64,000 bases of DNA from contig NIVC01001697.1 of the NCBI GenBank assembly GCA_002269645.1, positions 184,638 through 248,637 of the forward strand, given 5' to 3'. Shown here one piece after another: positions 32,868-63,547 of the stretch (position 1 is the first letter of the stretch; each line of letters begins with the position of its first letter). The DNA is from Macrostomum lignano (lineage: Eukaryota). The position numbers and the translations under genes are program-made. Under the pieces are notes generated by a model. It worked only from the letters and a program-made list of their open reading frames with translations, searched no databases and was not told the DNA's origin.

Positions 32868-32887
32868 GCCATGCTTCGGGCAGTCTC

Positions 32888-36054: not shown

Positions 36055-37242
36055 GGGAGCATGAGAATTGCCCATCGAGATTTGCCCGCTGAGATTTGCC
36101 CGCACTGCTTTTACATGTAGTTTACAGAGATTTACATGTAGTTTACAGAAATTTACATGTAGTTTACAGAGATTTACATGTTAGTTTGCAGAAATTTACA
36201 TCTAGTTTACAGAGATTTACATGTAGTTTACAGAGATTTGCATGTAGTTTACAGAAATTTACATGTAGTTTACAGAGATTTACATGTAGTTTAAAGAGAT
36301 TTACATGTATAGTTTACAGAGATTTACATGTAGTTTAAAGAGATTTACATGTAGTTTACAGAGATTTAGATGTAGTTTAAAGAGATTTACATGTAGTTTA
36401 CAGAGATTTACATGTAGTTTAAAGAGATTTACATGTAGTTTAAAGAGATTTACATGTAGTTTACAGAGATTTACATGTAGTTTACAGAGATTTACATGTA
36501 GTTTAAAGAGATTTACATGTATAGTTTACAGAGATTTACATGTAGTTTAAAGAGATTTACATGTAGTTTAAAGAGATTTACATGTAGTTTGCAGAGATTT
36601 ACATGTAGTCTACAGAGATTCACATGTAGTTTACAGAGATTTACATGTAGTTTACAGAGATTTACATGTAGTTTACAGAGATTTACATGTAGTTTACAGA
36701 AATTTACATGTAGTTTACAGAGATTTACATGTAGTTTGCAGAGATTCACATGTAGTTTACAGAGATTTACATGTAGTTTACAGAGATTTACATGTAGTTT
36801 ACAGAGATTCACATGTAGTTTACAGAGATTCACATGTAGTTTACAGAGATTTACATGTAGTTTACAGATATTTACATGTAGTTTACAGAGATTTACATGT
36901 AGTTTACAGATTTACATGTAGTTTACAGAGATTTACATGTAGTTTGCAGAGATTTACATGTAGTTTACAGATTTACATGTAGTTTACATAGATTTACATG
37001 TAGTTTGCAGAGATTTACATGTAGGGGACAAAGCGACATGTCATTTGCATGACTTAATAATGAAAATCTGCGAGAAAATATGCATTTGATAAGCTGTTAC
37101 TATCGAAACGTTTTGATCGGGCAAACCCTTTATTAAAACTTACCAAGAATTGGGAGGCAATGCATACAAAATCTGCCATATGTGGCTAAATGCGCTGTAG
37201 GAAAAAGCATTGCGGGCAATTCTCATATTGGCCCCAGATTCG
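36055..37242. mobile_element. Putative second foldback/MULE-like TIR element carrying a 21-bp array (tttacatgtagtttacagaga, ~36110-37022)
   Basis: ATGAGAATTGCCC (36061-36073) is inverted at 37214-37226, with further partial inverted similarity. TTTCTTGAGCA directly repeats at 36044-36054 and 37243-37253. The left end GGGAG resembles that of the 27924 element. Confidence 0.6.
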
Positions 37243-39432: not shown

Positions 39433-39726
39433 ATTCAATCGAAGGAAAAAGACACCTTTCTCAAAGTTCTTAATAACAATCCTATATAATATACTATCCT
39501 ATCCTATATACTATACTATCCTACAATCCTATATTATATCCAAATTTAATTAGCCTCTTCCCCCCGTTGCTCTGACGATGTTGTCTTTTTGTTTTTAAGG
39601 ACTTCTGGATTCTGCTTTCATCATCAAGTTTTATACAGTGGCTTACGCAGGAATTCCTAATTCGAAGAGGGCCGCAACGCTGAGGGGCGCCAATACTTGG
39701 TGTCTGGGTGGGGGCGGGCGCCCCGA

Positions 39727-41090
39727 TCTCTTGGTGGGCGCCCCTGTCTCTTGGTGGTCACATCTGTCTCTTGGTGGTCACATCTGTCTCTTGGTGGTCG
39801 CCCCTGTCTCTTGGTGGTCGCCCCCTGTCTCTTGGTGGTCGCCCTTGTCTTGGTGGTCGCCCCCTGTCTCTTGGTGGTCACATCTGTCTCTTGGTGGTCA
39901 CATCTGTCTCTTGGTGGTCGCCCCCTGTCTCTTGTTGGTCGCCCCCTGTCTCTTGGTGGTCGCCCCTGTCTCTTGGTGGTCGCCCCCTGTCTTGGTGGTC
40001 GCCCCCTGTCTCTTGGTGGTCGCCCCTGTCTCTTGGTGGTCGCCCCCTGTCTCTTGGTGGTCGCCCCCTGTCTCTTGGTGGTCGCCCCCTGTCTCTTGTT
40101 GGTCGCCCCCTGTCTCTTGGTGGTCGCCCCCTGTCTCTTGGTGGTCGCCCCCTGTCTCTTGGTGGTCGCCCCCTGTCTCTTGGTGGTCGCCCCCTGTCTC
40201 TTGGTGGTCGCCCTTGTCTTGGTTGGTGGTTGCCCCCCTGTCTCTTGGTGGTCGCCCTTGTCTTGGTGGTCGCCCCCTGTCTCTTGGTGGTCACAACTGT
40301 CTCTTGGTGGGCGCCCCTGTCTCTTGGTGGTCACATCTGTCTCTTGGTGGTCGCCCCCTGTCTCTTGGTGGTCGCCCCCTGTCTCTTGGTGGTCGCCCCC
40401 TGTCTCTTGGTGGTCGCCCCCTGTCTCTTGGTGGTCGCCCCCTGTCTCTTGGTGGTCGCCCCCTGTCTCTTGGTGGTCGCCCCCTGTCTCTTGGTGGTCG
40501 CCCCCTGTCTCTTGGTGGTCGCCCCCTGTCTCTTGGTGGTCGCCCCCTGTCTCTTGGTGGTCGCCCCCTGTCTCTTGGTGGTCGCCCCCTGTCTCTTGGT
40601 GGTCGCTCCCTGTCTCTTGGTGGGCGCCCCCTGTCTCTTGGTGATCACATCTGTCTCTTGGTGGGCGCCCCCTGTCTCTTGGTGGGCGCCCCCTGTCTCT
40701 TGGTGATCGCATCTGTCTCTTGGTGGTCGCCCCCTGTCTCTTGGTGGGCGCCCCCTGTCTCTTGGTGGTCGCCCCCTGTCTTTTAGTGGGCGCCCCTGTC
40801 TCTTGGTGGTCACATCTGTCTCTTGGTGGGCGCCCCCTGTCTCTTGGTGATCACATCTGTCTCTTGGTGGGCGCCCCCTGTCTCTTGGTGATCACATCTG
40901 TCTCTTGGTGGGCGCCCCCTGTCTCTTGGTGGGCGCCCCCTGTCTCTTGGTGGTCGCCCCCTGTCTTTTAGTGGGCGCCCCTGTCTCTTGGTGGTCACCC
41001 CCTGTCTCTTGGTGGTCACATCTGTCTCTTGGTGGTCACCCCCTGTCTCTTGGTGGTCACATCTGTCTCTTGGTGGGCGCCCACCCCTGT
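39727..41090. repeat. ~21-bp minisatellite (ccccctgtctcttggtggtcg)
   Basis: About 65 units; open in many frames, producing the spurious ORFs at 39638-41135. Confidence 0.96.
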
Positions 41091-42057
41091 CTTCTAGGCC
41101 GGTGGATGTCACGTCCAAGAGGTGACAAAAGTTGAGCTCCTGTCATTCATTTTTATTGGAGCACTATACTTATGGGAATATGGGGCGCAATTTCTGTGGA
41201 GGCGACTGAAGGCCGCGGCTCTTGAGCATGAGCTCAGGGTTGCTCCTTTGGCAAATTATCACGCGTTGGCCTTTAGAATAAATCATCAATAGACGCTTTA
41301 GCTAGTGTCGCATTGGTGATTCGCTCGTCGTCTATTTTATTATAATCATATTTTAAGTCCCCTGGGTCGACTCTTGACCCAGACAAGATTATTGACGCTT
41401 TGGCCTCTTAAAATATTTAAGGCACCTTAATTTTACAGCGTTAGTTTGCTTATTTATTGCAGCACCTCCATTTGCACTCCCACACACCGAATTTTCTTAT
41501 AGAACAGTGAGCTCCCGCGACCCCCCCCCTTCGCTCAGTGTACAGCCTGACCCAAACACATTATATCCACGAGGGTATAGGCCTGTGCCTGTAAAGACTA
41601 TACAACACTCTCCTGCCTTGGTTTCGCATCGGGGGGGGGGGGGGTTGCCATGCCCGTACGCACCGGGGGAGGCCGCAGCTTCGCCATTGGCCCGGAGGCG
41701 GGTTTAGTCACTGTGCACTGGAAACCGCTGGGAGAGAACAGGACAGAGGGGAGAGAGAGGGAGAGAGTGGGAGGGAGGGAGGGAGAGGTGGGGTGTTGAC
41801 CGATATAGCTAAAAAAGCAGAACAGCATGAGAGGGGGCCACGCAGCCTCATAACTTCGCATATTAACCTACACAAGAAGCGCTATACAACCTTGCAGGAC
41901 TACAACTGCTCTGAATAGTTTTGTTGCAAATAGAGAAATCGCAAGGTAAGGAACGATTGAATCTCTTTTCTGGTATTTCCTAATTTGCTTCATGCAATGA
42001 AGCATATGCAATACGTGTCTTGGTTTAGTTAGCGAGATGCAGAGTTCCTGAAAAACA

Positions 42058-42826
42058 CCGGAAATCCTGCAACACACAGCAGAAATCCTGCAACTCATAG
42101 CAGAATTCCTGCAACACACAGCAGAAATCCTGCAACACACAGCAGAAATCCTGCAATACACAGCAGAAATCCTGCAACACACAGCAGAAATCCTGCAACA
42201 CACAGCAGAAATCCTGCAATACACAGCAGAAATCCTGCAACACACAGCAGAAATCCTGCAACACACAGCAGAAATCCTGCAACTCATAGCAGAATTCCTG
42301 CAACACACAGCAGAAATCCTGCAATACACAGCAGAAATCCTGCAACACACAGCAGAAATCCTGCAACACACAGCAGAAATCCTGCAACTCATAGCAGAAT
42401 TCCTGCAACACACAGCAAAAATCCTGCAACACACAGCAGAAATCCTGCAACACACAGCAGAAATCCTGCAACACACAGCAGAAATCCTGCAACACACAGC
42501 AGAAATCCTGCAACTCAAAGCAGAAATCCTGCAACTCACAGCAGAAATCCTGCAACACACAGCAGAAATCCTGCAGCACACAGGCAGAAATCCTGCAACA
42601 CACAGCAGAAATCCTGCAGCACACAGGCAGAAATCCTGCAACACACAGGCAGAAATCCTGCAACACACAGCAGAAATCCTGCAGCACACAGGCAGAAATC
42701 CTGCAACACACAGCAGAAATCCTGCAACACACAGCAGAAATCCTGCAACACACAGCAGAAATCCTGCAACACACAGCAGAACTCCTGCAACTCGCAGCAG
42801 AAATCCTGCAACACACAGCAGAAATC
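42058..42826. repeat. 21-bp minisatellite (gcagaaatcctgcaacacaca)
   Basis: About 36 units. Confidence 0.95.
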
Positions 42827-48359: not shown

Positions 48360-48449
48360 TCCGGTGAGGCGGATTTGAACCACCGACCTAAGGATCACTG
48401 CACATTTGCACTCTACAGTCCTCCGCTCTACCAACTGAGCTATCACCGG
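48360..48449 (-). tRNA. trnY-GTA: tRNA-Tyr(GTA) with a 17-nt intron (48412-48396)
   Basis: CCGGTGATAGCTCAGTTGGTAGAGCGGAGGACTGTAG[AGTGCAAATGTGCAGTG]ATCCTTAGGTCGGTGGTTCAAATCCGCCTCACCGGA. Acceptor stem pairs fully, intron is at the canonical 37/38 position, and T-runs follow downstream. Confidence 0.96.
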
Positions 48450-48589: not shown

Positions 48590-51053
48590 ATGACTCAGCA
48601 AATTTCCTACTCAACCGTTGGATGGTTATTCCTATTCCTTGTGCTGTTGGCGGTAGTAGGCATTCTGCATCAAACGTGCACGACCAAGTCGCCGCTGATG
48701 CACACGTCGCCGGCTCTGATGCCGCAGTCGGCGTTGGCTGCGATGGTCGAGAGCGAGGCCCAAGAGGAGGAGGAAGAGGACATTCGAGTTCGTCGCTTAC
48801 CTCAAGCCATCGTCATCGGGGCCCGGAAGTGCGGCACCAGGGCGCTGCTTGACTTCCTGGAGGTGCACCCGCGGGTACGCGCGGCTCGCGGGAGGTGCAC
48901 TATTTCGATCGCGAGGAGAGGTGAGGGTGTTGTGCTTTTTGTGAACTGCAGTTCCTGTTTGAATGTCCTCAGGGTGCACTCTGTCATCAGCACTGTGTTC
49001 AGGGGGTGCTGTCCTCAGGTCACTATCATTAGTCGGCAATGTACACTAGCCTCTCGTTAGTGCTGCGCAATGTCAGTTTGAAAAGTTACTATACTCGTAT
49101 AGATACTCCGGTGATAGAAAGTTGCTATGAGCAGTATATACATGTCCGAAGCCTCAGGCCAGTTGCATTCCAGGTTGCATTCCAGCTTGTGTCATGTCCT
49201 GAGTCATTTGGTACGATACCGTTATCCTCTGCGGCATGGTTTTAAATGAAAAAAAACTGTACCCAATATGTCCGGGTCAAATTTATCCGGGGGAGCACTA
49301 TTTATAAAAAGTTCCAATTGCACCTAACAGTAAGTGAACTTTACTTTCTACCCCCACGCAGCACTTTGGGCATGTCCTGTTCTTGTAAGGAATCTTTGGT
49401 CTCACAGTCCTCATAAGTGTTTCGCAGGCTGGTTTATGGATTGCTAATCTAACCTGTGACAGGGTGCGCTTGAATTCTTGATTAGAGATCTCCTGTACAT
49501 AATTTTCGGTTGAGTAGCAGCATTGGAAGCTTTGTATTGGAGAAGCGTGTCTTTCAAGGGTCATTAACCTTGGAGACGCCCTCGTGATGACGCCAAAACC
49601 AATGATCGCCACTCACTTGCTTTAGTCTTAGCATACTGTAAGTAGTGCCATTGTTACAAATAGCCATGTTTATAATGTTTATTTAAAAATTGCAACTAGG
49701 CACATGTCAAATGTTGTCCTAACTTTTTACTTTTGGCCCAAAAATTAACTAGTTAAATATTTCAACACTGTCCTCTGGGGGAAGCAATGTCCTCAGCTGG
49801 CATTGTCCTCAGGGGCACTGTCGTCAGGGGACACTGTCCTCACGGGGCACGGTTCTCAGAGGGGGGCACTGATCTCAGGGGCGCAATCGACCAATAAGCA
49901 GACTGTTCGAATTCGAGACTATTTGGCACAATAGGTACGAGGTAAATTGGTAAATTGCAATCATCAAATCGTTGCTTATGCTTGGTCTATATGTTCCCGT
50001 AAAGCCAATCGAACTTACCCGACACTCGGGCATCTCCCGACTGGTATCCGCAGGCACAACCTTGGCCTGTCGTGGTACCGCGGCCAGATGCCGCTCAGCC
50101 GACCCGGCGATGTCACCTTGGAGAAGTCACCAGCCTATTTCGTCACCGAGGCTGCCCCAGCTCGGGTGTGGCGCATGAACACCAGCATCCAGCTAATCCT
50201 CATTCTGCGCGATCCCGTGGACCGCGTTGTCAGCGACTATGCGCAGCACGTGCACCGGCGAGTCTCCAAGGACTTGCCGCCCAAGCCGATCGAAAGTCTC
50301 GTGCTGACGCGCAACGGCGATGGCCGGGTGAATTCGAACGCCAAGATGGTGCAAACATCGCTCTATCACAGACATCTGCGGCGGTGGCTCAGGTGAGTAA
50401 AATCGAGTGGCTTATTGGTTACCCGTCTGACTCGTATTCGTGTAACATGTGTGAGTTCAAGGCTTAGCGCAATTGGCTCCGCCACCACTTGTCTCGTGGC
50501 TCGTGGTTCCCTCAAAAGTTACTGAATCTTAATCACATTGCTTAACCAGTTCGTAACTCCTGAACCAGGTGACTTCGTGACGCGTTCTTCTCATGAGTTT
50601 CGACTTATCGCCAACTGTATTTGGGTTTCTGAACGCTTTGAAAAAGTTTTTCTTAACAGTAAAGCCAATTGGTTTCTCATACCGCTCAGGTACTTCAAGC
50701 CCGACCAGATCCACCTGGTGGATGGCGATCGGCTGGTCAGTCAACCGCACTCGGAGCTGCAGCAGGTCGAGGACTTTCTCGGCTTAAAGCGGCACATTCG
50801 TCCGGAGCATTTTGTCTTCAACGCCACCAAAGGCTTCTACTGTCTGGCTCCGTCTGTTAGCAGCGGCCGAGGTAAAAAACGCAGACAGCGCTGCCTCGGC
50901 TCCGAGAAAGGCCGCCGACACCCGAGCGTGGCTAATTCTACTCTGACGGCGCTGCGCCACTTTTTTGCTGGACACGACGAACGCCTCGTCCAGCTGACTG
51001 GGCGCACTTTTGATTGGATGCGACGGAACGCCCAGCAGTTTGGAGAAGAGTAA
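48590..51053 (+). CDS. HS3ST: Heparan sulfate glucosamine 3-O-sulfotransferase; exons 48590-48920, 50054-50392, 50690-51053; apparent 1-nt deletion at G run ~48890-48892
   Basis: Signal anchor; LPQAIVIGARKCGTRALL (5'-PSB loop); EVHYFDR after the frameshift; WYRGQMP..EKSPAYF; LILILRDPVDRVVSDY (3'-PB); FNATKGFYC..CLGSEKGRRHP. Confidence 0.93.
49278..49665. repeat. Dispersed repeat family copy (homolog of 14020-14615) in HS3ST intron 1
   Basis: Collinear shared blocks, see the 14020 entry. Confidence 0.68.
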
Positions 51054-51377
51054 ACGGTGGTGAAGCCTCTTTCAATAGCCTAATTATTAGCCGAATTCCG
51101 CTTGCTTGTCTAGAAAATAAGAATCCATTGCCATTCGGGACGCATCGAACTTTAATAAAGAGACTCAAAAGATATGGCTTTTAGAAACTAAAGGAAAGGT
51201 TTTCCATGGAAATAAACTGCCAATAGGATGGAACAGTCGTAAACGGATGATGCTTAGAGCTCAAGATAACGCAAAACAAACATTGCTGACTCAGATTACA
51301 ACTCAATAGTATTCCACCGTTTGCACTGGTGCTGTTGTCCATGGTCAATATTTTGTTAGCGCAAGTGCGCAGATAAG

Positions 51378-52240
51378 CGAAATCTCACACTAAACCATAG
51401 ACGTCTGCACCAGTGCAGATAAGCGAAAACTTACACTAAACCATAGACATCTGCACCAGTGCAGATAAGCGAAATCTCACACTAAACCATAGACATCTGC
51501 ACCAGTGCAGATAAGCGAAATCTCACACTAAACCATAGACATCTGCACCAGTGCAGATAAGCGAAATCCCACACTAAACCATAGACATCTGCACCAGTGC
51601 AGATAAGCGAAATCCCACACTAAACCATAGAGATCTGCACCAGTGCAGAAAAGCGAAATCTCACACTAAACCATAGACATCTGCACCAGTGCAGAAAAGC
51701 AAAATCTCACACTAAACCATAGACATCTGCACCAGTGCAGATAAGCGAAATCCCACACTAAACCATAGACATCTGCACCAGTGCAGATAAGCGAAATCTC
51801 ACACTAAACCATAGACATCTGCACCAGTGCAGATAAGCGAAATCTCACACTAAACCATAGACATCTGCACCAGTGCAGATAAGCGAAATCCCACACTAAC
51901 CATAGAGATCTGCACCAGTGCAGATAAGCGAAATCCCACACTAAACCATAGACATCTGCACCAGTGCAGATAAGCGAAATCTCACACTAAACCATAGACA
52001 TCTGCACCAGTGCAGATAAGCGAAATCCCACACTAACCATAGACATCTGCACCAGTGCAGATAAGCGAAATCTCACACTAAACCATAGACATCTGCACCA
52101 GTGCAGATAAGCGAAATCCCACACTAACCATAGAGATCTGCACCAGTGCAGAAAAGCGAAATCTCACACTAAACCATAGACATCTGCACCAGTGCAGATA
52201 AGCGAAATCCCACACTAAACCATAGTCATCTGCACCAGTG
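51378..52240. repeat. 46-bp minisatellite (cagtgcagataagcgaaatctcacactaaaccatagacatctgcac)
   Basis: About 18 units, each junction forming ATCTGCAC-CA-GTGCAGAT. Confidence 0.96.
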
Positions 52241-53267
52241 GCTATCGCAATTGTGCACCCACTGGCTTGACGAGTTTCAGTTCCGTTGTGGATCTAGATG
52301 AATTCTTGATTGCTGATGCAGACGCACGATAAAACTGTGCTGCGATGACTTTTTGTTTCTTGGAATATGAACGCACATGTAAAATCTGATTTACATGTTA
52401 CTTGAATCTGATTTCTCTGCAAGTATTGAATTATTGATTTATTGTTTAATTCAATTTCTTCGTATTGCTGTGGTGTTAAAGCAATCGGTTAAACAGCTTT
52501 CGCCATTTGTAATTAACTTTTGTTTAAATGAGAGCGATCGATTTACCCTGGCTACCTATGACAGTTTTGTCAGTTGTAAATAATTTTGTTTGGTTGGTTA
52601 GCCTTTCACTTCCGATGTTTGCCCTCATTCTTATAGAAAACGAATTGTAATTGTTTCTGAATGTATACGACAGTTTTATTTCCTGTATTAAAATCGCGCT
52701 CTCACTCTCACATCGCGCTGCTTTTGCACTGCCAGAAGTTTATAGTTTCATCCAGCCTATTGCGAGTTTGGTTTTCACTTGACTTCATTCAATATTCGTT
52801 GGAGTAAACATTCTGTTATATAAAAATACAATCAAAAAGTAACGTGATGAGCCCAGTGATATTCTCAGTTACGTTTGTGTACTTGCTAAATATTAACTAG
52901 ATCTGAATCTTTGTTACCTGACGCAACTTTGACGCTCATTTAATAGATTTTTAGCAGAGAGCTCAGAAAGTGCGAACCCGGGTTCCCTTCCCTGAACTGC
53001 CCGCCTGCGGCTTCATGATGAAGGGACAGCAGCGAGACATCGTCTATGGCCAAGCGATAGCCATTGTCGGCTGATTTTCCATGCAAGAATGGCATTCTTG
53101 CACTCTTTTGCGTGCAGGAATGGATGTCTATGGTAAAATCTCACTGAAAAAGCATTAGGCGCAGAAATGCATTCCTGCACGGTTTTGTGCATTCCTGCAC
53201 GATGAATCATCCGACAATGGAATTCCTTCACGTTCACTCGTGCGTGAAGGAATATATCAGTGTCTGC

Positions 53268-53586
53268 GGCACCAAAATGAGTGCCTGAATGCGACACCAA
53301 AATGAGTGCCTGAATGCAGAGCCAAAATGAGTGCCTGAATGCGACACCAAAATGAGTGCCTGAATGCAGAGCCAAAATGAGTGCCTGAATGCGACACCAA
53401 AATGAGTGCCTGAATGCAGAGCCAAAATGAGTGCCTGAATGCGACACCAAAATGAGTGCCTGAATGCAGAGCCAAAATGAGTGCCTGAATGCAGAGCCAA
53501 ATTGAGTGCCTGAATGAATGAAGAGCCAAAATGAGTGCCTGAATGCAGAGCCAAATTGAGTGCCTGAATGCAGAGCCAAAATGAGT
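53268..53586. repeat. ~25-bp minisatellite (ccaaaatgagtgcctgaatgcaga/gcgaca)
   Basis: About 12 alternating units. Confidence 0.92.
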
Positions 53587-54328
53587 TTTTTCATTTTCAG
53601 ATTAAAAAATTATCAGCAAATTGAATTTCTCAATGCAGTATACATTGAATTCTACGAAATATTCGCATACCCTAAGTCCTAAACTATAGCTCAGACTCAA
53701 TTAAGCGTTCACGCAGTTTTTTGATACTTTGAAACCTATAGGAATTCACGCGCTGTCCATCTGCTGCGCTACTGACCAACTTTATCAACTGAACAAACAA
53801 CTAACGAGCTGGTTTAAACGGGATCCCTACCAAGAAGCTTCAGAAGCTGAGCAATCCAAAAGCCTGCTTTAGTTCCTCCAGAGAACTTAAGACTGGCGAT
53901 CTACATGTAACGATGCCGCAGCCACATGCTTTACATTCGACGGCTGTGCACAGACTTAAGAAGCTCGGATCTTTCAACTGAACCTCGATTGCTATAAAAT
54001 AACAGCCAGGTTAATTGCATCTCAGCTTGATTTGTCGCTCTCCTCAAAGCGGCTTTCACGAAGCAGACAAACTCAGCAACTGACAGCCAATTAACATGCT
54101 TAACTTTTCTTTTCGGACGGCAAAAGTGCTAACAAACTGAGCACAGCCGGTAGAAAAAAGGGACAGAAAATAGCCAGAGTAATAACCAGAGAATAACAGA
54201 AATTTTTTCAATAAAGCAAAAGATAAAAGGAAATAAATATTAACTTGATGCTCGAAAATGTTTTGAACATTCTGTCAGTCCACGAGTCAAGCAGTTCAAA
54301 GACCCTGCAATCAGACTCGGTCCGAGTG

Positions 54329-55420
54329 CTAACGCACGCTCTGTCGATTGCTGGCCGTCGAGCTGCTGCCAGAAGCGCCCGGTCGACGACGGCAGGAGGC
54401 GCAGCAGCAGCAGCACAGGGACAGCCACACTCGGCAAAACGCCTCTCGAAAGTTCCGTCCCATCAAGTACGTCACCCAGCACAGAGCGTTGTTCGCGTAC
54501 AGCAGCGAGTTGAAGTGCCGCATCATCAATATGAAGAAGTTCAGTCCGAGCTTATTTAGAATTTGGACTTCGAGCAGAGCGCCGATGCTCCACGGCAAAG
54601 ACGTGATCAGAAAGAAGACGTTGATGAAGACCAGCATGAGGCTGATCCGAACAAGCGACCTCTGTCGCTCTCGGTTGCTTCGCTGCTGCTGCTCAGAGCC
54701 GGCCGTGTCGGAGTGCATTCGCCGAGCGGTCCTGTTGTTCCAGGCCAGCAGCACGCAGATGACCACCGTGCCCGACGTCAGCGCCAGAACGAGGAACACC
54801 CTGCCGAAGTAGAACTCGACCGGCTGGTACACGAACATAAGGTAGTTCATGCTTCGTAATCCGCAGGTGTTTGTGGAGTCGTTCCACGTTCTATTCGCAA
54901 TGAACATGATCGGCAGTAGAAGTGACATTGCAGTGATGAGGCTCAGCATTACCCAGCTTCTCCGATGTGTCAGAATCACCTTGGCCTTCATCGGAACCGC
55001 TACTGCAATCAGCCGATCTACCGTGAGACCCAGTTGAAAAAACTGGGATCCCGCTAGCGCATAGTATGTAAAGAAGTCGTACACAATGCACCAAGCGAGT
55101 CTCCAGCCTCTCGGATCGGTGAACCAAGTCTACTTGTTTGTCTTCACGTAGAATGCCATGTAGCCAAAGTAGTGAGTGCTCACCTTGCACGTGAGAATGA
55201 GAAAGTCACTGGCAGTGATGATGGTGAGGTACTGCCTGGTGACGTAGGGAAACGACTTCCTGTTGGACACGATCACGTAGAAGGAGACGGCGTTCGCGAC
55301 CGCTCCGACCAGACAGAGCAGCGGAAAGAGCCAGACGAAGACGTTCCAGATGAACCAGTTCCAGGTGGGGTCGTGGAACCAGGGCTCACTTGCAGCAGCT
55401 GTTGTATTGGTGCCCTTCAT
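54329..55420 (-). CDS. Intronless class A (rhodopsin-like) GPCR, peptide-receptor-like; one in-frame TAG at 55132-55130 (possible pseudogene)
   Basis: ORFs 55130-55426 and 54329-55084 are in the same frame. Seven hydrophobic segments; GAVAN (TM1), ASD (TM2), Cys at the top of TM3, TVDRLIAVAVP (DRY-like), FLITSLPW (TM6), YANNALCWVTYL..NFRE (TM7/H8), C-terminal Cys run. Splice acceptor 6 nt before the ATG at 55420. Confidence 0.88.
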
Positions 55421-56715
55421 TATCACCTGTGGCTAGCGGTTTGAATCCATGCAAAAGTAAATTTTGCGATACCCTGGTACGTGCTGTTGGAATAATAAAT
55501 TCGCATCTTTGATGAGAAGAGTCAATTTTTTAAGGCAAGGTTTCGTTCAGTGACAGAGACGAGTCAGTTTTTGCATTCGATTTGCACTGGCCAATCACAT
55601 GTATTTGCAGTTTTTGAGAATACATGTTTGCCAGGATAGTAGAATGCAGTTGAATCTCATGCCAGTTGGATACATATTTGCTTATAGCTTATTCGTTTCG
55701 TTTAAGAGTTAAAATATTGCAATGGTTGTAGACGCGGCCAGAATTGTCAGTGAATTTTTCTCACTTGTATGGACAAACATCCGTGAAACGGATTTAATTC
55801 TAGCTAATCCACTCTCACTTGCAGGCAACTCGGTTGCTTCCAAAACAAATTTGCATAACCATGGCTTCTTTCCCGTTTGGTGAGCGGTAGCCAGCGCGAC
55901 GTGTGGCAAAATATCTTTGCAATTTAGCTATTTCCGCTTAGCTTCGCCACCAGAGGACGGCTTTGCAAATGGGCTGCAATTGAGACAAAGTTGGATCGTA
56001 AAATCATTAGTAATTTTTTGTACATGTACGTTTCCATGCACTAGTTCTAATACATGTAGCCTAAATAGAACAGAATAGTTGCACTACTGTGGAAGCTCAG
56101 TAGCGCTTCTGACTTTCGATGGAGTTCCGGGATTCGATTAAATCATGATTCATCCGCTGAGTTGGACCTGGAGTTGGTCGTTCTGCAACGCAATCGAGTG
56201 CCAAACACCAAGACGCTGGTGTACATGCCTGACGAGCGAGTGCATGCTCAGTGGACATAACTTCTTGCCACCTCGCCGCCACAAACAAGTAACAGAATAA
56301 GCAAGGACAAGATGCACTCTAAAAAATGTCACTGCCCATTCTGCTGACTCCTCCTGAGCACATAAAAGAACGCCAATACTGAACGCAAGCACGCACTCAA
56401 AAACACGTTCACACAGGGTGCCTCCAGCAACACCTGCACAGGCCATGGGAAGTGAAACTAGCGATGGAGAGACGTCTGTAGCCCACACGAGCTCAAACCC
56501 TTGAAAATGTGCATTTTTTGTGTTGTTTTTGCGTGCGCTCTAGGCGGCCATCCCAGACCAGTTCTGGCTGGTTGGGGGGGGGGGCGCTCGTCCCGGTTTG
56601 AGTCTTTCCCCGCGGCGGCCACTGGTTGGCTGGGCTTTTTTTTTTCTAGCCCCATTCAGTCGGATCTGCTCGGCGGGCGCGCTGATTGGCTGAGAGGTCA
56701 TTTCTTATGTTTGGC

Positions 56716-56758
<43 letters not shown>

Positions 56759-56761
<3 letters not shown>

Positions 56762-57420
56762 CGGCCCCTCTACCCTGTTTATGTGGTATATAGTGCTCAT
56801 GCCTGGCCCAGCCAGCTCCCCGCGTTTGCGCCCGCGCCTACTTCTTCAAACTAAACTAGAGATACTCAAACGAGCCGTATCGACGGTCTCTTACTGCGAA
56901 GACTCAATTTATTGCATGCGAGCCGTGTCTAGACGGTCTTTTACTTCGAGGACTCAATTGATTGCTAGCAAAATAAAGCAGTCAAGTGGTGGCGATATTC
57001 GAACGAGCTCCACAGTTTCTGGCACCGGTAAGAGCCCCGAGTTCATTCGCTTCCTTAGCTTTTCTGAGGCCTTGCCGTAGCAGTGGTTTGATAGCTAGAG
57101 CGTCATCACGCCAGCGACTGTGACCACTGCAGCACAGCAGCGTTGTATATTGTGTATTATTGTAGTACTGTACCGGTTACTTTATATAGTGTGTACAACC
57201 TACAGTGTCGAAACTAGAAGCACTCGAGAGTGTCGCCACACCTCGAGCCGCAGCGTGAACTCTGAGTGTCACAACACCAGAGGGATCGACCCATTATCGC
57301 AGAGCGTCGTCACGCCTGCTCGTATCCATAAAAGCACAGGCAGAGCGTCACTACGCCTGTCGTATTACGTATAAAATATTGTACTCGGACTGTGCACCCA
57401 AACCGACCCGGGTTACGACA
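56759..57420 (+). mobile_element. Solo-LTR-like segment (TGTCG...CGACA) carrying tandem spliced-leader copies; left boundary uncertain (may extend to ~56477)
   Basis: Inverted 5-bp termini, TATATA at 56787, AATAAA at 56972, internal short direct repeats (agagcgtc..cacgcc x3). No TSD, PBS or internal retroelement ORF found. Confidence 0.45.
56874..56968 (+). other. Two tandem flatworm-type spliced-leader (SL) exon sequences, neither followed by a GT donor
   Basis: Copy 1 GCCGTATCGACGGTCTCTTACTGCGAAGACTCAATTTATTGCATG (56874-56918); copy 2 GCCGTGTCTAGACGGTCTTTTACTTCGAGGACTCAATTGATTGCTAG (56922-56968). The 5' CCGT..ACGG hairpin and 3' TTGCATG are flatworm SL hallmarks. Copy 1 closely matches the Macrostomum lignano SL as I recall it; this needs verifying. 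Confidence 0.85.
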
Positions 57421-58335
57421 AAAATTATACTCTTTCTGAAGATCTTTTAAACGCTTGGTCCTAACTTTCAACCAAACTAATAGACTTCGAAATACGGAAG
57501 CGCAGAAGCATAGTAGAAAGCTTCTCGATTAGTCTCTTTTTTAAATGTCAAATAGGTCAAATGAGGAGAGTCAATGAGTAAATGTGTGCTTGATTTATAA
57601 CAATTTCTTCCAAGAGACTGAATATCTGACAGTAGTTGCAGCTGAGACTGCTCACAGAATAGGTATAGTTTCAGGGCCCTGATCAGGCAAGGTCCGACCA
57701 CCAGCACAATGGGTTGTTCAATGCCTGTCTGCACTTGTACCAGCTTTGTAGAGAACTGTTAAAATCATGCCATAATGTGCTACTTAAGGGTAACACTGTA
57801 AGAAAGTCAATTTAAATCTGCCACCTATTTTTTAAAATAGATCATGGGCAAACAGAGTGACTCAGAACCCTACAGAGGACCAACGTTTGTTTGTTCAAGG
57901 AACCGGATTTCAACAGCTATATTGGCTTAACCCCACATATGGTAATGCTTTAATGCTCACCTACACCCTTCAAGACCAAGACGTCTGACCAAGCAAGTTA
58001 TCTGATTTTGCATATACCTCGGCACTTGTCCCCAGTGTCTACGCTCGTAGAAGTGGGAGTTTTTGAGTGACTGATCACCACTCTTAAATTCTTCAGCCTG
58101 CAAGCTTGCTGAAAAAGATTAATTTAGAAGCAAACATATGCATTGTTTAACTGCGAGCGTAGTATCAAATTATGGGTTATAAATGTTAAGCATCAGTATA
58201 GCATATTAAATAGCCACTACACAGAAGTAGAATTGGCTATAACTTAGCAACTCCAGTCCAAGTGGGAAGATTTTTTTAAAACAGAACCTCTCAGCCAGAG
58301 CGATCGACTAAATTTTAGTTTGCATAGCCTGCAGA

Positions 58336-58611
58336 GAAGGGATTGTAGCCTAGTGGTTAGAGCGACGAACTCACGAATTGAAGGTCGGGAGTTCGATTCC
58401 CGATCACACTGGAACAGTTTGTGTCCAAGACACTGAACTCTGCATTGCTTCAGTTCACCCTGCAGTAAAATGGGTGCCAGCAGTAGCTGGGGTAATTGAG
58501 GGTGTGTGTGGCGACCCCCCAGTCCTTCGACTGAACAGCCGTACGCAGCCATCAGATGCGGCTGAGCTGTCGGTTGCACATCTGGCCCAATTGGGGCAGG
58601 TGTAATAAAAA
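58336..58611 (+). mobile_element. tRNA-derived SINE (family A) with CORE-like central domain, 10-bp TSD AGCCTGCAGA
   Basis: A box TAGCCTAGTGG (58346), B box GTTCGATTCC (58391), CORE-like CAAGACACTGAACTCTG..CTTCAGTT..GTAAAATGGG, A tail; TSD at 58326-58335 and 58612-58621. Confidence 0.88.
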
Positions 58612-60498
58612 AGCCTGCAGAATCGTCTTCCAGATCCTATCAGTAGCACAGCTACATGTATAAATCTCCATCATAAATAAGGTATTGCTTAGAGCATACT
58701 GGTCCTATGAGTCTCCTCTAGTGAGACATGCACTCTCCCTGATTTCTGTGGTCTAGTGCTAATGTCTGCATTTTGACGCTATATTTTGTTTATATGCTTG
58801 CAACTGCTGGATCTGGGAAGAGAGGCTCATGGTGGGGAGAGGATTCGGGAGTGTCCTCGCGTTGCCCGTGCCCCGTACGTTGCTCTCTGTCCCCACGCGC
58901 CCCGCCCACAACTAACCACACGCCTCACTGTACGGTCCTGTTCCAGGTCCACTGTACGGTCCACTGTACATCCGTGGCTACCTACCCCTGCACACTGCAT
59001 ACTGATGGATGGTGAAGAGATGGGGTGAGATGTGGGGTGAGAAATGGAGAGGCAGGGTGAGCGTAGGGGAGAGGTAGGGGGCGCCTGGGGTCATACATAT
59101 CGGCGCTCGTGCTGTGGCTCTTGTTTAATTCACCGCTCCCATGAGGAGAGGAAATGAAAAATGGAACAGATCAGCGTTAACACAACTGCCCTAGTCTGTA
59201 AGATTCATATTATAACGGAGCCAAATTGCATCAATTTTTTAATCCACGCTCTGGACGTCCGCTATGCGTCTGTTGGGCTTGACTTTGATGCATTGAAGCC
59301 CAGAAATGCTGGGAAGACACTGGCCCACACGGCAATTTTATAAATAGAACCAGCATCTATTCCTTTGTCCACAGTTTCCTCTGTTCCAGCTGCTTCTTTT
59401 TTGCCAATCCCAATCACCATCCTCGCGCTGTGGTTCCTGCTTAATTCACAACTGTCCTGCTCTGCTCCGTCAAAATCGATAATATACCGGAGCTGCATAG
59501 AGTCAATTTAAATTTTCCAAAGCTAAAAAGTAGGCTATGTGGCGTAGAATTTGAAGCTTAATCCCACTCACTGCATTTATGGACAGGGCCAAGTTAATTT
59601 GCCTTTCTTCTTCAGTTCGTTATTTTGTATATAATTGCTTTAACTTAACACGAAGCGTGGATATTTTGCACATAAAATACGCTGCTCCGAGCAAAAAGCA
59701 AACCTCAATACAAGTTGCTCATTGTTGTTAAAGTACAACCTAGCTGTTCATTATAATGATTCGCTGTGTACACTTTTATTTCTATTTTCAGAGGCCATTT
59801 GGAGCAAGAATTTGGTCTCGCGCTTTCCGGACGCATAAAATACTCTCTAATATTTTTTAGAGCCGCCTTATAATATGCAGAGTTGTAGTAGCTTAATGTA
59901 GCATCTTTAATTATTACTCCACACCTCGAAACCAGTGGTTTTTTAGTAAAACATCACATTTTTCTATTTGGGGCGAGAACTTTTGAATGTGCTGGGATTC
60001 CTTCCCTCACTGGTATTTGGATTTCATCTTGAGAGACATCTTGGATCATATTTAGCTATAGTAAAATAATAGCTTGTCGCTAGTCATATGTACTAAAAAT
60101 GAAAATCTTGCTTGCTTGATTTTCCATAGCGTGATTCACTGGTAGACTAAAAAAGAAGCGAGTAAAAGTATGATGTTAGAATTAAAGATAAGATGCCATT
60201 GTTGATTTTGCAATTGCTTTGGGAATGATAAATATAGAGTTAATGGGATTGTGGAGGAAGTGAAAAACTTTGTACTAAAAGCCCCCCCCTATCCTGACAG
60301 CTATACTGTTCTGGGATGGTGTCCATAGAGACGAGGACAACAAATTCTATTCGCTGGATAGCCCAGCCAGCCAACAGGAAAATACAGCTGAGACATTATA
60401 TTTAGAGCTGCAACTGCTCACTGGCTTAGCGACTTTCCTGGCTTAGAAGCATCTACCAATCTACCTCGACAACCAAGCCCTGCTGTCAGCGTCTTGGA

Positions 60499-61968
60499 AT
60501 GACACTTCACGAAGTTGCCATAACCTTGGCAGTGCTGATTTCATTCACCGACGGTACATCTTTTGTCTTCGACAAGAGGCCGGACCTGTGCCACAATGCT
60601 AGCACTGCAGCTGACGGTCCGCGCAAACTGCTGGGCGTTGCCGATCCTCGAGTGTGCGCTGTCGAATGCGCGAGCAACACGACTCTGTGCTCAGTGTATG
60701 AGTACTCGCCTAGCAACAGGTCATGCATTCTTGGAAACAGCTGCGACCTGCTGCTTTTCTGGCAACTCAGCGGCGGACCGGCCTGCAACACGCAGGTGCT
60801 GCGAGGCGCAGCAGACTGTGAGACTGCGTCAGTGACTCCAACTACGACTTCAATTCCGATTACGACTCCTACAACGACCACTACGACTCCGACTACAACG
60901 TATTCAACTCCTGCTCCACTAGCACTAACAGGTAAGCATAAAAACAAGTTTACCGTACGGATGTATCTAACTTTCCAGCTTTTCCATGATGAACCACTGG
61001 TTTTGCATCTGACATTAGTCCGATTAAGTGCGTAAAGAACAAGAAGGAATAGACTTGCAGAACCAAAAGGTGGTCGTCTGGTATTGTGGTTTGCAGGCGT
61101 TAACCTCACATTTCTCACAAGAGGAGACTCAGAGGGCCTATATGCTCTAAGCAATAACTCTCGGCGGAGTTTTCTGGGTTTGTAGCATAAGGAGGGTTGC
61201 CAATTTTCTCCTTTGCGACATAAATTTTCAGTGCCAACCTCGGGTTCAAAAGAACATGGAACGCCGGTGACCTACACGCCCCCTGTGGACAATGCCTGCT
61301 ATCGGTTCGAAGCGCGTGGCGCCAAAGGAGGTTCCGGAAGCGCAGCTGGTGGAAACGGGGCTATAAAAATTGCCCACTTTATCCTGAACAGCTCTCAAAC
61401 GTTGACTATTGTTGTCAGAAAATCCAGAAACGATGGCGATGGCGGCGGCGGCGGAGGCGGCACTTTCGTCTACACGAGTGGCGGCAGTCCCGTCCTGCTG
61501 CTGGCGGCCGGAGGAGGAGGCGGTGGAGGAGGCGTCAGTTCGGCTACAGGCAGCCCTGGAATCAGTTCGACCGGCGGCTGCTCCGGAAACGCGGGAAGCA
61601 ACCCGTCCGGAAATAACTGTGGCGCCGGCGGTGCAGGATGGCAATCACCTGGAACTTCACCCGGAGGCAACCATTGTGGCTCAGTTGGAAGTAACTTGGC
61701 AGGAGGTGATGGTGGATCAGGAGGCGGCTTTGGTGGCTACGGTGGTGGAGGCGGTGGAGGCCGAACAAATGGAGCAAATAAGGCCGGAGGCGGCGGCGGC
61801 GGTGGCTACTGCGGCGGCTCCGGCGGCGAATCGGGCAGTCCGGGTGGCGGCGGCTCCAGCTATGCAGCTTCTTCAGCTAAGCAAGTTTCAGGATCGGATG
61901 GAGGCAACACCGAATCTGATGGCAAGGTAGACATATCTATCGTGAATGGCTCCTTCTGCACACCGTGA
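60499..61968 (+). CDS. Secreted protein: signal peptide + PAN/Apple-like domain + Thr-rich linker + ALK/LTK-type glycine-rich domain; exons 60499-60931 and 61232-61968
   Basis: Hydrophobic N-terminus; C..C...C..Y.YSPSNRSC.L PAN pattern; TTPTTT stalk; phase-1 GT-AG intron; YRFEARGAKGG..GNGA..F.L...TLTIVV..GGGGGTFVY..LLLAAGGGGG..GGGGGY.GG..GGGGSSY. Confidence 0.82.
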
Positions 61969-62635
61969 TCACCCGTTGAAAACGTTACCGGGACAGAATC
62001 GCTAAAAACACATACAAACAACCCTATAGCGACTATTGTAAATTTTAGAACTGAAACAACTGTAATTCAACGTAGAGGCGACTGTGAAATCACAAGCGCG
62101 TCACGTGAGTGTTAGATTCTTATAAGAGTCGCGAAAGAGTCGCCCACAAGTCATTTTTTTCAATAAACGCTGTTGGAATGATAAAGGCGCGGATTTGAAG
62201 GAAAGAGTCAATTTTGAAGACAATGTTTCGTCGTATGACAGGGACGAGTTAGCTTTCACATTTGATTTTCATTGATACATTTGTGCCGTCGTGTATTAGC
62301 ATGTATTACAGTCGTTAAGAATGCATGTTTGACAGCATTGGAGAAAGGCAGTTGAGTCACTGCTCGTTGGATATACCAGCAGAGGGTGAGGGTGTTTCAA
62401 AATTAACGATAATTTTTTATAACTTTTGGCTGAAGGAACGTACGATCTCGTACATTTGTTCATATGTTATTCCTCTCGCGCTAGAATTTATTTTTAGAGT
62501 AAAAGTATTGAATGTGTATGGACGTGGCTATATTCCTCTGTGACATTCTTTACGTTTTCATGGACAATAAGCTTTCTCCTGTTTCAACGCAAACGGATTT
62601 GATTCTAGATAGCTCCATGTGCAAAGCCACTCTTT

Positions 62636-62882
62636 GCTGCTGGCCTGGAACAACAGGACCGCTCGGCGAATGCACTCCGACACGGCCGGCTCTGAGCAGC
62701 AGCCGCGGAGCAACCGAGAGCGACAGAGGTTGCTTGTTCGGATCAGCCTCATGCTGGTCTTCATCAACGTCTTCTTTCTGATCACGTCTCTACCGTGGAG
62801 CCTCGTCGCCCTACTTGAAGTCCCAAATCATAAAAATACTCAAACTCAACTCATTCATATTGATGATGCGGCACTTCAACTC
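62636..62882 (+). pseudogene. Inverted partial duplicate of the GPCR (end of TM5, ICL3, TM6, start of TM7) with indels
   Basis: LLAWNNRTARRMHSDTAGSEQQPRSNRERQRLLVRISLMLVFINVFFLITSLPWS is nearly identical to the GPCR at ~54500-54750, then shifts frame. Confidence 0.9.
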
Positions 62883-63547
62883 CACACTTCAACTCCAGTA
62901 GCAGATTGGAGTCAGCCAGTCGATTAAAATGTTGTAAATTATCTTGTTATTTTTGGTGCATATGAGCGTAGAAGGCTGATAAATATTAATGCCGACAATA
63001 TTTTTATCATCGAATATCTTCAAACATAATAGTTTTTACCGGCTTAATCTACTAAATGAAAAACTCTCAGAACAGACTTTTCTACAGCCTGCTGATTAAA
63101 TCTGTAAAGAAATCGAAAATTTATCTTAATAATCTTATTCCTTAAAATGTATTAGCATACTACTTTTACAAACTACTTGCTCAATCCTCTTATTGTTCAG
63201 TAGAGTTTATACTTTGAACAAGTTTTCTGTACGAGGCAAATGGAAAGCAGGCTGTATACTCAGACTTTTCAGAGCTGGCGGAAAAAACTATCTTGATTTT
63301 ATTTAACTCTGTCAATGAAAATCGTTAGTATAAAACTCTTCGCCGTTATAACCCACCCCGACTTCATCCTCAGTCTCAAACTGCAAAGCGATCTCACGGT
63401 CGAATCTATTCAATGCCTAAAACAACTTTCTTAACTTTCTTAACCAGTATTTCAAATATTGCATCCTGGTCTCAACGAAGTAGCTAGTAGACCATGCAGC
63501 ATATCATGCAGTTTGGAAGCTTTAAAAAGCATATTATCTGTACAGAG

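What the first reader, a model, noticed from the sequence alone, without database searches (positions are those of the whole stretch)
56759..57420. LTR-like element with two tandem genome-encoded spliced leaders (possible SL mimicry)
Seen: two 46-48-nt repeats in tandem. Copy 1 is an essentially intact flatworm SL ending in TTGCATG. Copy 2 differs at 6 of 37 positions after the first loop and has lost the ATG, but both hairpins can still pair. Neither copy is followed by GT or an Sm-site intron, so this is not an SL RNA gene. The order is CCAAT-like box (~56683), TATATA (56787), SL, SL', AATAAA (56972), CCG|GTAAGA donor (57028), and end GGGTTACGACA, which resembles an LTR U3-R-U5. Known: flatworm SLs end in AUG and are added in trans; SL-targeting retroelements (NeSL, SLACS/CRE) and tandem relict SLs from recycled cDNAs (dinoflagellates) exist. 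Inference: a retroelement family whose transcripts start with a hard-wired SL, mimicking host trans-spliced mRNA for translation or self-recognition. The newer-5'/older-3' order suggests repeated SL capture when a trans-spliced element RNA was reverse transcribed.
Basis: partly seen in the sequence, partly recalled or inferred. Interest (0 to 1): 0.9.

Follow-up and report, generated by a model that had tools for sequence, protein, structure and literature searches.

The report
Genome-encoded spliced-leader relic in Macrostomum
Two head-to-tail DNA copies of the Macrostomum lignano spliced leader (one intact, one decayed) sit in the genome without the rest of the SL RNA gene, most likely as a leftover of reverse-transcribed trans-spliced RNA and not as an LTR retroelement; similar relics are already reported in other flatworms.

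Summary
Window 56874-56918 is the Macrostomum spliced leader: 35/35 to the published M. lignano SL, and 43/45 to the full exon. A decayed second copy follows directly at 56922-56968. Neither copy carries the SL RNA intron.

The window is the last 64 kb of M. lignano contig NIVC01001697.1. I recovered two genuine Macrostomum-type SL RNA genes from environmental contigs. They show what a real gene looks like: a 45-nt exon, GTAAGACACCG, a hairpin, an Sm site and a second hairpin. None of the non-exon parts is present here. The copies are therefore exon-only and end at the splice junction, which points to an RNA-derived (reverse-transcribed) origin.

The LTR reading is not supported. The segment occurs once in the window. 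It has no target-site duplication, no primer-binding site or polypurine tract, no partner LTR and no retroelement domains nearby. It lies at the same position, with the same flanks, in a 1.2%-diverged paralogous contig. There the tandem is a single chimeric copy that differs by a 50-bp indel.

One point favours an LTR: the 3' end GGTTACGACA resembles the terminus of a real M. lignano LTR. A genome-wide copy count could not be run.

Genome-encoded exonic SLs are already reported in S. mansoni, in other parasitic flatworms and once in M. lignano. Interest is modest.

The parts
56874..56918 (+). SL copy 1: full 45-nt spliced-leader exon. It is 43/45 to the genus-wide SL (loop ATC instead of AAA), and its 3' 35 nt are identical to the published M. 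lignano SL. It ends in the SL ATG (56916-56918).
56871..56873 (+). CGA immediately 5' of copy 1. The same three bases precede copy 2 (56919-56921). Two real Macrostomum-type SL RNA genes have TTT at this position.
56922..56968 (+). SL copy 2 (SL'): decayed full-length exon copy. Its loop is GTCTA, it has 6 substitutions in the 37 nt after the loop, and ATG has become TAG.
56882..56931 (+). 50-bp stretch absent from the paralogous contig (L001). There a single chimeric copy joins the loop of copy 1 to the body of copy 2.
56969..56993 (+). 25-nt tail after SL' containing AATAAA (56972-56977). It is not SL RNA intron sequence and there is no poly(A) run.
56861..56875 (+). Direct repeat arm GATACTCAAACGAGC. 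Its partner GATATTCGAACGAGC is at 56994-57008 (13/15). Together they bracket SL, SL' and the tail, and may be a target-site duplication with microhomology.
   Evidence: 2 of 2000 shuffles, post hoc
56994..57008 (+). Second arm of the flanking direct repeat.
57028..57033 (+). GTAAGA splice-donor-like site. The sequence after it is not homologous to the SL RNA intron and shows no SL-RNA-like fold.
56683..56793 (+). Promoter-like stretch: inverted CCAAT (ATTGG, 56685-56689), (TC)19 at 56719-56756, and TATATA at 56787-56792, which is 87 nt upstream of the SL.
   Evidence: function inferred only
57098..57357 (+). Five same-strand copies of GAGYGTCNYNACRCC. Four lie in a degenerate array with a period of about 38-41 nt. 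The motif occurs nowhere else in the window.
   Evidence: (5 found, 0.24 expected)
57411..57420 (+). GGTTACGACA at the GC-rich to AT-rich boundary. It matches 8/10 the terminus GGTTACATCA of a real LTR in L001. No inverted partner and no target-site duplication were found.

Best explanation
The locus is a genome-encoded, exon-only relic of the Macrostomum spliced leader. SL-bearing (already trans-spliced) RNA was reverse transcribed and the cDNA became fixed in the germline, between a rhodopsin-type GPCR gene and a PAN-domain gene. It lies inside or just downstream of a Pol II promoter-like region.

The 3' copy (SL') is old and decaying. The 5' copy is young or recently re-templated, and it is still identical to the working SL over its last 35 nt. 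The two-copy array is unstable: one of the recently duplicated copies of this chromosomal region carries two units and another carries one chimeric unit.

It is neither an SL RNA gene nor a demonstrable LTR. Its most likely present-day effect is passive. If the region is transcribed, the RNA carries an internal SL plus an upstream AUG. Such reads would also make SL-trimming annotation pipelines call the locus 'trans-spliced'.

Shown: identity with the SL, absence of any SL RNA gene parts, single-locus status within the DNA available, and the paralog indel. Inferred: reverse transcription as the origin, the order of events, and transcription of the locus.
For: 1. SL identity. The match to the published SL is exact and unique in the window.
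2. Both copies stop at the exon/intron boundary of real SL RNA genes. Neither continues into GTAAGACACCG, the hairpins or the Sm site, all of which are conserved in two independent Macrostomum-type SL RNA genes (L004, L005). That intron is absent from the whole window.
3. The flanks, and the sequence after the 57028 donor, show no significant similarity to SL RNA gene flanks or intron and no SL-RNA-like fold (against z = -3.0 for the real gene).
4. The window is NIVC01001697.1:184638-248637 of M. lignano Mlig_3_7.
5. The paralogous contig NIVC01001660.1 is collinear over 6 kb with 71 substitutions in 6027 aligned bases, or 1.18%. It carries one chimeric SL unit, as expected from unequal exchange within the shared GACGGTCT.
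6. It follows that SL' (about 7 differences plus an indel) had decayed long before the 1.2% split, whereas copy 1 has none in its 3' 35 nt.
7. A 13/15 direct repeat brackets SL, SL' and the tail.
8. Precedent exists. There are 32 extra loci with genome-encoded exonic SL in S. mansoni, 6 of them in transposable elements (PMC5832876). There are 597 TE-associated SL-bearing loci in parasitic flatworms (PMC12582326). In M. lignano, one SL sequence maps to the 5' end of gene Mlig013257.g1 (PMC8629364).
Against: - There is no poly(A) tract at the 3' side of the putative insert, and no identifiable parent gene for the 25-nt tail or the 450 nt that follow.
- The flanking direct repeat was found post hoc.
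- Both copies share a non-SL 'CGA' at their 5' side and a 'TC' in the loop. Two fully independent captures of the canonical SL do not predict this. It points instead to local duplication, gene conversion or templated repair.
- The 3' boundary GGTTACGACA looks like an LTR end.
- No transcript data were available, so whether the locus is expressed is unknown.
- The genome-wide copy number is unknown.
Confidence: 0.6

Rival explanations
1. Reader's model. The segment 56759-57420 (or 56508-57420) is an LTR or solo LTR of a retroelement family. Its U3 holds the CCAAT and TATA boxes, and its R region begins with a hard-wired SL acquired when a trans-spliced element RNA was reverse transcribed.
For: - The termini are TG...CA with a 5-bp inverted repeat, TGTCG/CGACA.
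- The 3' end GGTTACGACA matches 8/10 the terminus of a bona fide M. lignano LTR, GGTTACATCA, in L001. It is the only GGTTACNNCA in the window.
- The order of promoter-like boxes and AATAAA fits U3-R-U5.
- SL sequences associated with LTR and LINE elements are reported in other flatworms.
Against: - There is no second copy in the window or in L001 other than the paralogous position.
- Flanks CTCGC / AAAAT give no target-site duplication, whereas the real LTR in L001 has a clean 5-bp duplication and a 10-bp terminal inverted repeat.
- No inverted partner of the 3' terminus exists.
- There is no PBS after 57420 and no polypurine tract before 56759.
- No Pfam retroelement domain was found downstream in the + frames, or across 55.6-60.4 kb in the - frames. 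No retroelement domain was found in the ten large window ORFs scanned.
- There is no overall similarity to the L001 LTR.
- The TATA box is 87 nt from the SL.
- One 35-nt SL BLAST survey of the genome reported only SL RNA genes and one gene 5' end.
Confidence: 0.15
2. A single SL relic was captured once, together with its CGA flank, and later became a tandem in situ. The route would be duplication plus gene conversion, or SL-cDNA-templated repair at the old relic. On this view the one-copy state in L001 is ancestral and copy 1 is very recent.
For: - Both copies share CGA at -3..-1, where real genes have TTT, and share TC in the loop.
- The L001 single copy carries the loop of copy 1 and the body of copy 2.
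- Copy 1 has no changes in its 3' 35 nt, consistent with an age below the 1.2% split.
Against: - It needs one complex event that inserts exactly the canonical SL 3' part plus a re-copied 5' part.
- A simple unequal-exchange deletion explains L001 in one step.
- The repeat unit's boundaries coincide with the SL exon ends, which a random duplication would not give.
Confidence: 0.2
3. A decayed SL RNA gene or gene cluster, derived at the DNA level. The GTAAGA at 57028 and the U-rich AGCUUUUCUGAGG at about 57056 would be remnants of the intron and Sm site.
For: GTAAGA lies 60 nt after SL'. The U-run sits at +33-36 from the donor, close to +34-38 in real genes.
Against: - Identity to the real intron, anchored at the donor, is 18/56 (p = 0.2).
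- The fold is no better than shuffles (z > 0), against z = -3.0 for the real gene.
- Upstream flanks are not similar.
- Both SL copies lack GT at the exon end.
Confidence: 0.04
4. A functional cis-encoded SL. Copy 1 is kept intact by selection because transcripts of this locus use the SL sequence or its AUG for translation or recognition (SL mimicry).
For: - The asymmetry is strong: no change in the 3' 35 nt of copy 1 against 6 in copy 2.
- The SL ATG is the only ATG I saw between 56916 and 57420, by reading the sequence.
Against: - The asymmetry is equally explained if copy 1 is simply young.
- Local divergence between the paralogs is the same as the background, about 1%.
- The ORF from the SL ATG stops after 54 codons if unspliced. 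It has no good in-frame continuation if spliced at 57028.
- The SL would be internal rather than cap-adjacent if the TATA box is used.
- The paralog has lost the intact copy.
Confidence: 0.08

Closest known systems
Genome-encoded exonic SL sequences in flatworm genomes: S. mansoni, 32 extra loci (Boroni et al. 2018, PMC5832876); parasitic flatworms, 597 TE-associated loci (Calvelo et al. 2025, PMC12582326); M. lignano Mlig013257.g1 (Ustyantsev & Berezikov 2021, PMC8629364)
   Same: An SL exon is present in genomic DNA without the SL RNA intron, at or near the 5' end of a transcription unit. These cases are interpreted as reverse-transcribed trans-spliced RNA.
   Different: This locus has two full-length copies head to tail, of clearly different age. 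No transposable element is demonstrable within about 1-3 kb. It may or may not be a homeolog of the Mlig013257.g1 locus.
Relict tandem spliced leaders of dinoflagellate retrogenes (Slamovits & Keeling 2008, as cited in PMC5832876 and PMC12582326)
   Same: SL copies are tandem at the 5' end, with the newest copy 5' and the older, decayed copy 3'. They are read as a signature of mRNA recycling through cDNA.
   Different: From my own knowledge of that work (not read here), dinoflagellate relicts are 5'-truncated because the new SL is spliced to an AG inside the old SL. Here the old copy is full length and preceded by three extra bases. No intronless coding body or poly(A) follows.
Bona fide Macrostomum SL RNA gene (L004, L005; 109-bp gene described in PMC8629364)
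   Same: The 45-nt exon sequence is shared.
   Different: This locus has no GTAAGACACCG intron start, no hairpin II, no Sm site (AUUUUUAG), no hairpin III and no conserved TCTTT upstream flank.
LTR retrotransposons and solo LTRs acting as promoters (for example ta-TRIM in Echinococcus, PMC4558846; the LTR element inserted in L001)
   Same: TG...CA ends, a GGTTAC..CA terminus, and promoter-like boxes upstream of an AATAAA.
   Different: No target-site duplication, no partner LTR, no PBS or PPT, no internal ORFs, and no other copy in the DNA available.
SL-gene-targeting non-LTR elements (NeSL-1, SLACS, CRE)
   Same: They involve SL sequences and reverse transcription.
   Different: From my own knowledge, those elements insert into SL RNA gene exons and carry RT and endonuclease ORFs. 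Here there is no SL RNA gene and no ORF.

Membership tests
SL RNA gene (Macrostomum type) | SL exon directly followed by the GT splice donor (ATG|GTAAGACACCG) | tested here: not met
   Copy 1 is followed by CGAGCC and copy 2 by CAAAAT. The intron start is absent from the window.
SL RNA gene (Macrostomum type) | Sm-binding site flanked by two hairpins, with an overall three-hairpin fold | tested here: not met
   The Sm and hairpin III sequence is absent. The fold z-score is above 0, against -3.0 for L004. Anchored identity is 18/56, p = 0.2.
SL RNA gene (Macrostomum type) | Conserved upstream flank (TCTTT|GCCGT) | tested here: not met
   Both copies have CGA|GCCGT. Caveat: the reference genes come from other, unidentified Macrostomum-like species.
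LTR retrotransposon / solo LTR | TG...CA termini with a short inverted repeat | tested here: met
   TGTCG...CGACA. The 3' end is 8/10 like a real LTR end. This is weak evidence, because the boundaries were chosen by eye.
LTR retrotransposon / solo LTR | Target-site duplication of 4-6 bp flanking the LTR | tested here: not met
   The flanks are CTCGC and AAAAT. The real element in L001 has AAAAG on both sides. Only a trivial AAAA match appears if the start is moved to 56508.
LTR retrotransposon / solo LTR | Second LTR, PBS/PPT and gag-pol ORFs | tested here: not met
   There is no repeat of the segment. No Pfam retroelement domains were found. No PBS or PPT is visible by reading the sequence.
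LTR retrotransposon / solo LTR | Multicopy, dispersed family in the genome | not testable with these tools
   Only about 104 kb of M. lignano DNA could be reached. Within it the segment occurs only at the two paralogous positions.
Retroposed copy of a trans-spliced RNA (relict SL) | SL present in spliced form, ending exactly at the exon 3' end and joined to non-intron sequence | tested here: met
   Alignment to two real genes.
Retroposed copy of a trans-spliced RNA (relict SL) | Poly(A) tail and flanking target-site duplication | tested here: inconclusive
   There is no poly(A). A 13/15 direct repeat brackets SL, SL' and the tail (2 of 2000 shuffles, but found post hoc).
Retroposed copy of a trans-spliced RNA (relict SL) | Identifiable intron-containing parent gene | not testable with these tools
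   The genome is not searchable. The ORF spanning the SL copies has no homolog in the protein database.
Dinoflagellate-type recycled mRNA with relict SLs | Older SL truncated at an internal AG used as the new acceptor | tested here: not met
   Copy 2 is full length and preceded by CGA.
NeSL / SLACS / CRE SL-targeting retrotransposons | Element with RT and endonuclease ORFs inserted into an SL RNA gene exon | tested here: not met
   No SL RNA gene and no RT domains.

The most novel reading that the evidence does not exclude
In a metazoan germline, trans-spliced RNAs are recycled into the genome repeatedly, as in dinoflagellates. On this reading, this locus records two successive SL acquisitions. 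The intact 5' copy would be kept because a Pol II transcript with a cis-encoded SL and its AUG is functionally treated like a trans-spliced mRNA (SL mimicry), possibly as part of a low-copy LTR-like promoter module.
Probability: 0.1. Interest if true: 0.65.

Novelty: new member of a known kind. Interest (0 to 1): 0.35.

Why it matters
If this is a relic, it is a dated footprint of germline reverse transcription of SL-bearing RNA in a free-living flatworm model.

It is also a practical warning. Pipelines that trim the SL and map the remainder will call such loci 'trans-spliced', and loci like this have been mistaken for the SL RNA gene before (PMC8629364).

The two-copy against one-copy difference between homeologs shows how quickly such arrays change.

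It would matter more if a genome-wide search showed a family of such units, or if transcripts proved to start at the SL. The evidence obtained here does not point that way.

Tried and rejected
- Rfam scans at gathering and permissive thresholds found nothing at the locus.
- A protein-database search with the 99-aa ORF spanning the SL copies gave no hit. A search with the neighbouring GPCR ORF gave no hit at E <= 1e-20. An exact look-up of the PAN ORF found nothing. Only the sulfotransferase anchor worked.
- Wasik et al. 2015 is not in the library, so its mis-assigned 'SL RNA' sequence could not be compared. Mlig013257 is mentioned in no other paper.
- Decayed SL RNA gene: tested with local alignment to real SL RNA gene flanks and intron, donor-anchored identity and folding. 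Rejected.
- Exon hairpins preserved in copy 2: not better than shuffled sequence.
- Search for an exon 2 that continues the SL-ATG reading frame: no credible acceptor.
- SL pattern in IMG/VR viral contigs: no match.
- Overall similarity between the segment and the real LTR in L001: none.
- A genomic-placement control for the flanking direct repeat was uninformative, because the window's satellites inflate it.
- The third paralogous contig (L003) ends in a satellite 3.3 kb short of the locus.

Full report
**What is there.** Reading 56400-57700 and running TRF confirm a two-unit tandem at 56871-56965 (period 50, 85% matches).
- The 34-mer GGTCTC...GCATG occurs once in the 64-kb window, at 56885-56918, with none expected by chance.
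- Together with base 56884 it equals the 35-nt Macrostomum lignano spliced leader printed by Ustyantsev & Berezikov (PMC8629364).
- The longer SL from transcriptomes is CCGTAAAGACGGTCTC...GCATG (PMC5173321). It is identical in M. cliftonense and M. hystrix (PMC10468722 supplement).
- Copy 1 (56874-56918) differs from it only in the loop, with ATC for AAA.
- Copy 2 (56922-56968) has loop GTCTA, six substitutions in the following 37 nt, and TAG in place of ATG.

**Where the window comes from.** The neighbouring heparan-sulfate 3-O-sulfotransferase-like gene (48590-51053) matches M. lignano protein BOX15_Mlig018191g1 at 96%.
- Its cluster mate BOX15_Mlig003539g1 is encoded on NIVC01001697.1. The fetched stretch is 100% identical to window 40088-61053.
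- The window is therefore the last 64,000 bases of that Mlig_3_7 contig.
- Other window genes are ordinary host genes: PACS-1, a B4GalT-like glycosyltransferase, a rhodopsin-type GPCR at 54329-55426 (-) and a PAN-domain ORF at 60499-61035 (+). Much of the rest is satellite DNA.

**What a real SL RNA gene looks like.** One metagenome scan and one scan of prokaryotic assemblies with SL patterns each returned a contig carrying a bona fide Macrostomum-type SL RNA gene.
- These are L004 and L005, a flatworm contaminant binned in a Flavobacteriaceae MAG.
- They agree from TCTTT|GCCGTAAAGACGG through ...GCATG|GTAAGACACCG, a hairpin, AUUUUUAG and a second hairpin.
- They fold into the canonical three-hairpin structure, with the donor paired to the exon (z = -3.0).
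- This fixes the exon at 45 nt starting at GCCGT, and it supplies a test set for the locus.

**Not an SL RNA gene.**
- Both window copies end exactly at the exon 3' end and continue into unrelated sequence.
- The intron start and the Sm/hairpin III block are absent from the window.
- The sequence after the GTAAGA at 57028 has 18/56 identity to the real intron when anchored at the donor (p = 0.2). It folds no better than shuffles.
- The upstream flanks are not similar.
- The copies are therefore in spliced form. This is the main argument that they came from RNA through reverse transcription.

**The paralog.** Contig NIVC01001660.1 (L001) is collinear with window 53742-59882, with 71 substitutions in 6027 aligned bases, or 1.18%.
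- The whole 'LTR-like' segment is there with the same flanks and ordinary divergence, about 1%.
- The SL array, however, is one unit: CGAGCCGTATC|GACGGTCTTTTACTTCGAGGACTCAATTGATTGCGAG. This is the loop of copy 1 joined to the decayed body of copy 2, and it differs from the window by a 50-bp indel at 56882-56931.
- One unequal exchange within the shared GACGGTCT explains this in a single step.
- In that case the two-copy array, with SL' already decayed, predates the 1.2% split.
- The alternative is that L001 is ancestral and copy 1 was added recently by SL-templated repair. This would explain why both copies share a non-SL CGA at -3..-1 and a TC in the loop.
- I cannot decide between these two routes. 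In both, the 5' copy is the younger sequence.
- A third paralogous contig (L003) ends in a satellite before reaching the locus.

**Is it an LTR?** Evidence against:
- No second copy exists in the window, or in L001 apart from the paralogous site.
- Flanks CTCGC / AAAAT give no target-site duplication, and there is no PBS or polypurine tract.
- No inverted partner of the 3' terminus was found.
- No Pfam retroelement domain appears in the + frames of 57.4-60.4 kb, in the - frames of 55.6-60.4 kb, or in the ten large window ORFs scanned.
- The TATA box is 87 nt upstream of the SL, so a transcript 'starting with' the SL is not what the boxes predict (inference).

A useful contrast turned up by chance. 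L001 carries a real 13-kb LTR retrotransposon in the sulfotransferase intron. Its LTRs are 2.1-2.2 kb and 99.4% identical, its termini are TGATGTAACC...GGTTACATCA, it has a clean 5-bp target-site duplication AAAAG, and the window holds the empty site.

It is also the only GGTTACNNCA in the window. There is no further similarity.

**Other anatomy.**
- A 13/15 direct repeat (GATACTCAAACGAGC at 56861-56875, GATATTCGAACGAGC at 56994-57008) brackets SL, SL' and a 25-nt tail containing AATAAA.
- With that geometry, only 2 of 2000 shuffles do as well, but I found the repeat post hoc. It could be a target-site duplication with 5' microhomology. The absence of poly(A) argues against a classical processed retrocopy.
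- Downstream, five same-strand copies of GAGYGTCNYNACRCC occur only in 57098-57357. Their meaning is unknown.
- From the SL ATG the frame stays open through SL' and stops at 57078 if unspliced. If spliced at 57028, there is no credible in-frame acceptor. A coding role is therefore not supported.

**What is known.** Genome-encoded exonic SLs are documented.
- In S. mansoni there are 32 extra loci, 11 merged to genes and 6 to transposable elements. They were interpreted as retro-transcribed trans-spliced RNAs, with explicit reference to dinoflagellate tandem SLs (PMC5832876).
- In parasitic flatworms there are 597 SL-bearing loci associated with LTR and LINE elements (PMC12582326).
- In M. lignano, the sequence once reported as the SL RNA maps to the 5' end of gene Mlig013257.g1 (PMC8629364). 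That locus is at different coordinates from the two copies seen here and may be the third homeolog (speculation).
- I did not find a tandem pair of unequal age reported for a metazoan in the papers I searched. That is the only new element.

**Verdict.** The SL identification and the 'not an SL RNA gene' call are right, and a reverse-transcription origin is well supported. The LTR and mimicry interpretation is not supported, though it is not excluded. This is a new member of a known kind, of modest interest.

Noticed in passing
L001 1600-14566 (NIVC01001660.1); empty site at window ~49304-49309: A 13-kb LTR retrotransposon sits in the intron of the paralogous sulfotransferase gene. Its LTRs are 2.1-2.2 kb and 99.4% identical, with termini TGATGTAACC...GGTTACATCA and a 5-bp target-site duplication AAAAG. 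It is absent from the window copy, so it is a recent insertion that distinguishes the two homeologs.
   Followed up: partly
L005 1589-1700 (JAGQZA010000190.1, 'Flavobacteriaceae bacterium' MAG): A complete Macrostomum-type SL RNA gene lies on a contig binned into a bacterial MAG. This is eukaryotic (flatworm) contamination of that genome bin.
   Followed up: partly
L004 615-722 (metagenome contig Ga0302322_100095745): A second complete SL RNA gene, from an unidentified Macrostomum-like flatworm in a metagenome. A partial duplicate of the exon start (GCCGTAAAC) lies 15 nt upstream of the exon, and a long intronless ORF lies at 1775-2922. The ORF was not analysed.
   Followed up: partly
window 58330-58610; also 27790-27922 and 29133-29269: A tRNA-like head (GTAGCCTAGTGGTTAGAGCG...GGTCGGGAGTTCGATTCCCGATC) is followed by about 200 nt that recur, 76-83% identical, on both sides of a satellite at 27.9-28.8 kb. 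This looks like a tRNA-derived SINE family.
   Followed up: no
window 57098-57357: Five same-strand copies of GAGYGTCNYNACRCC (0.24 expected in the whole window). Four form a degenerate array with a period of about 38-41 nt. Function unknown.
   Followed up: partly
window 54507-54753 vs 62882-62635; 62619-62927: A 248-bp piece of the GPCR gene is repeated in inverted orientation at 91.5% identity, 7.9 kb away. It carries an open GPCR-like fragment, so the SL locus lies between a GPCR gene and a GPCR pseudogene fragment.
   Followed up: no
window 48360-48449 (-): Rfam calls a 90-nt tRNA (60 bits) just upstream of the sulfotransferase gene. ARAGORN, run in bacterial mode, finds no tRNA in the window. 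The tRNA may contain an intron.
   Followed up: no
window 3000-5355, 13046-13604, 14902-15486, 16066-17402, 17913-18940, 19456-20638, 27931-28789, 32886-33953, 34670-35840, 36110-37024, 37820-39435, 39701-41097, 42039-42826, 51369-52240, 53265-53586: At least fifteen separate satellite or minisatellite arrays, each unit 85-96% identical, fill a large share of the window. Array lengths differ between the paralogous contigs.
   Followed up: no
L003 (NIVC01005084.1:12911-26679): A third paralogous copy of the sulfotransferase neighbourhood exists in the assembly. Its contig ends inside the 25-nt-unit satellite that corresponds to window ~53560, and it has an extra insertion of about 570 bp relative to the window.
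   Followed up: partly
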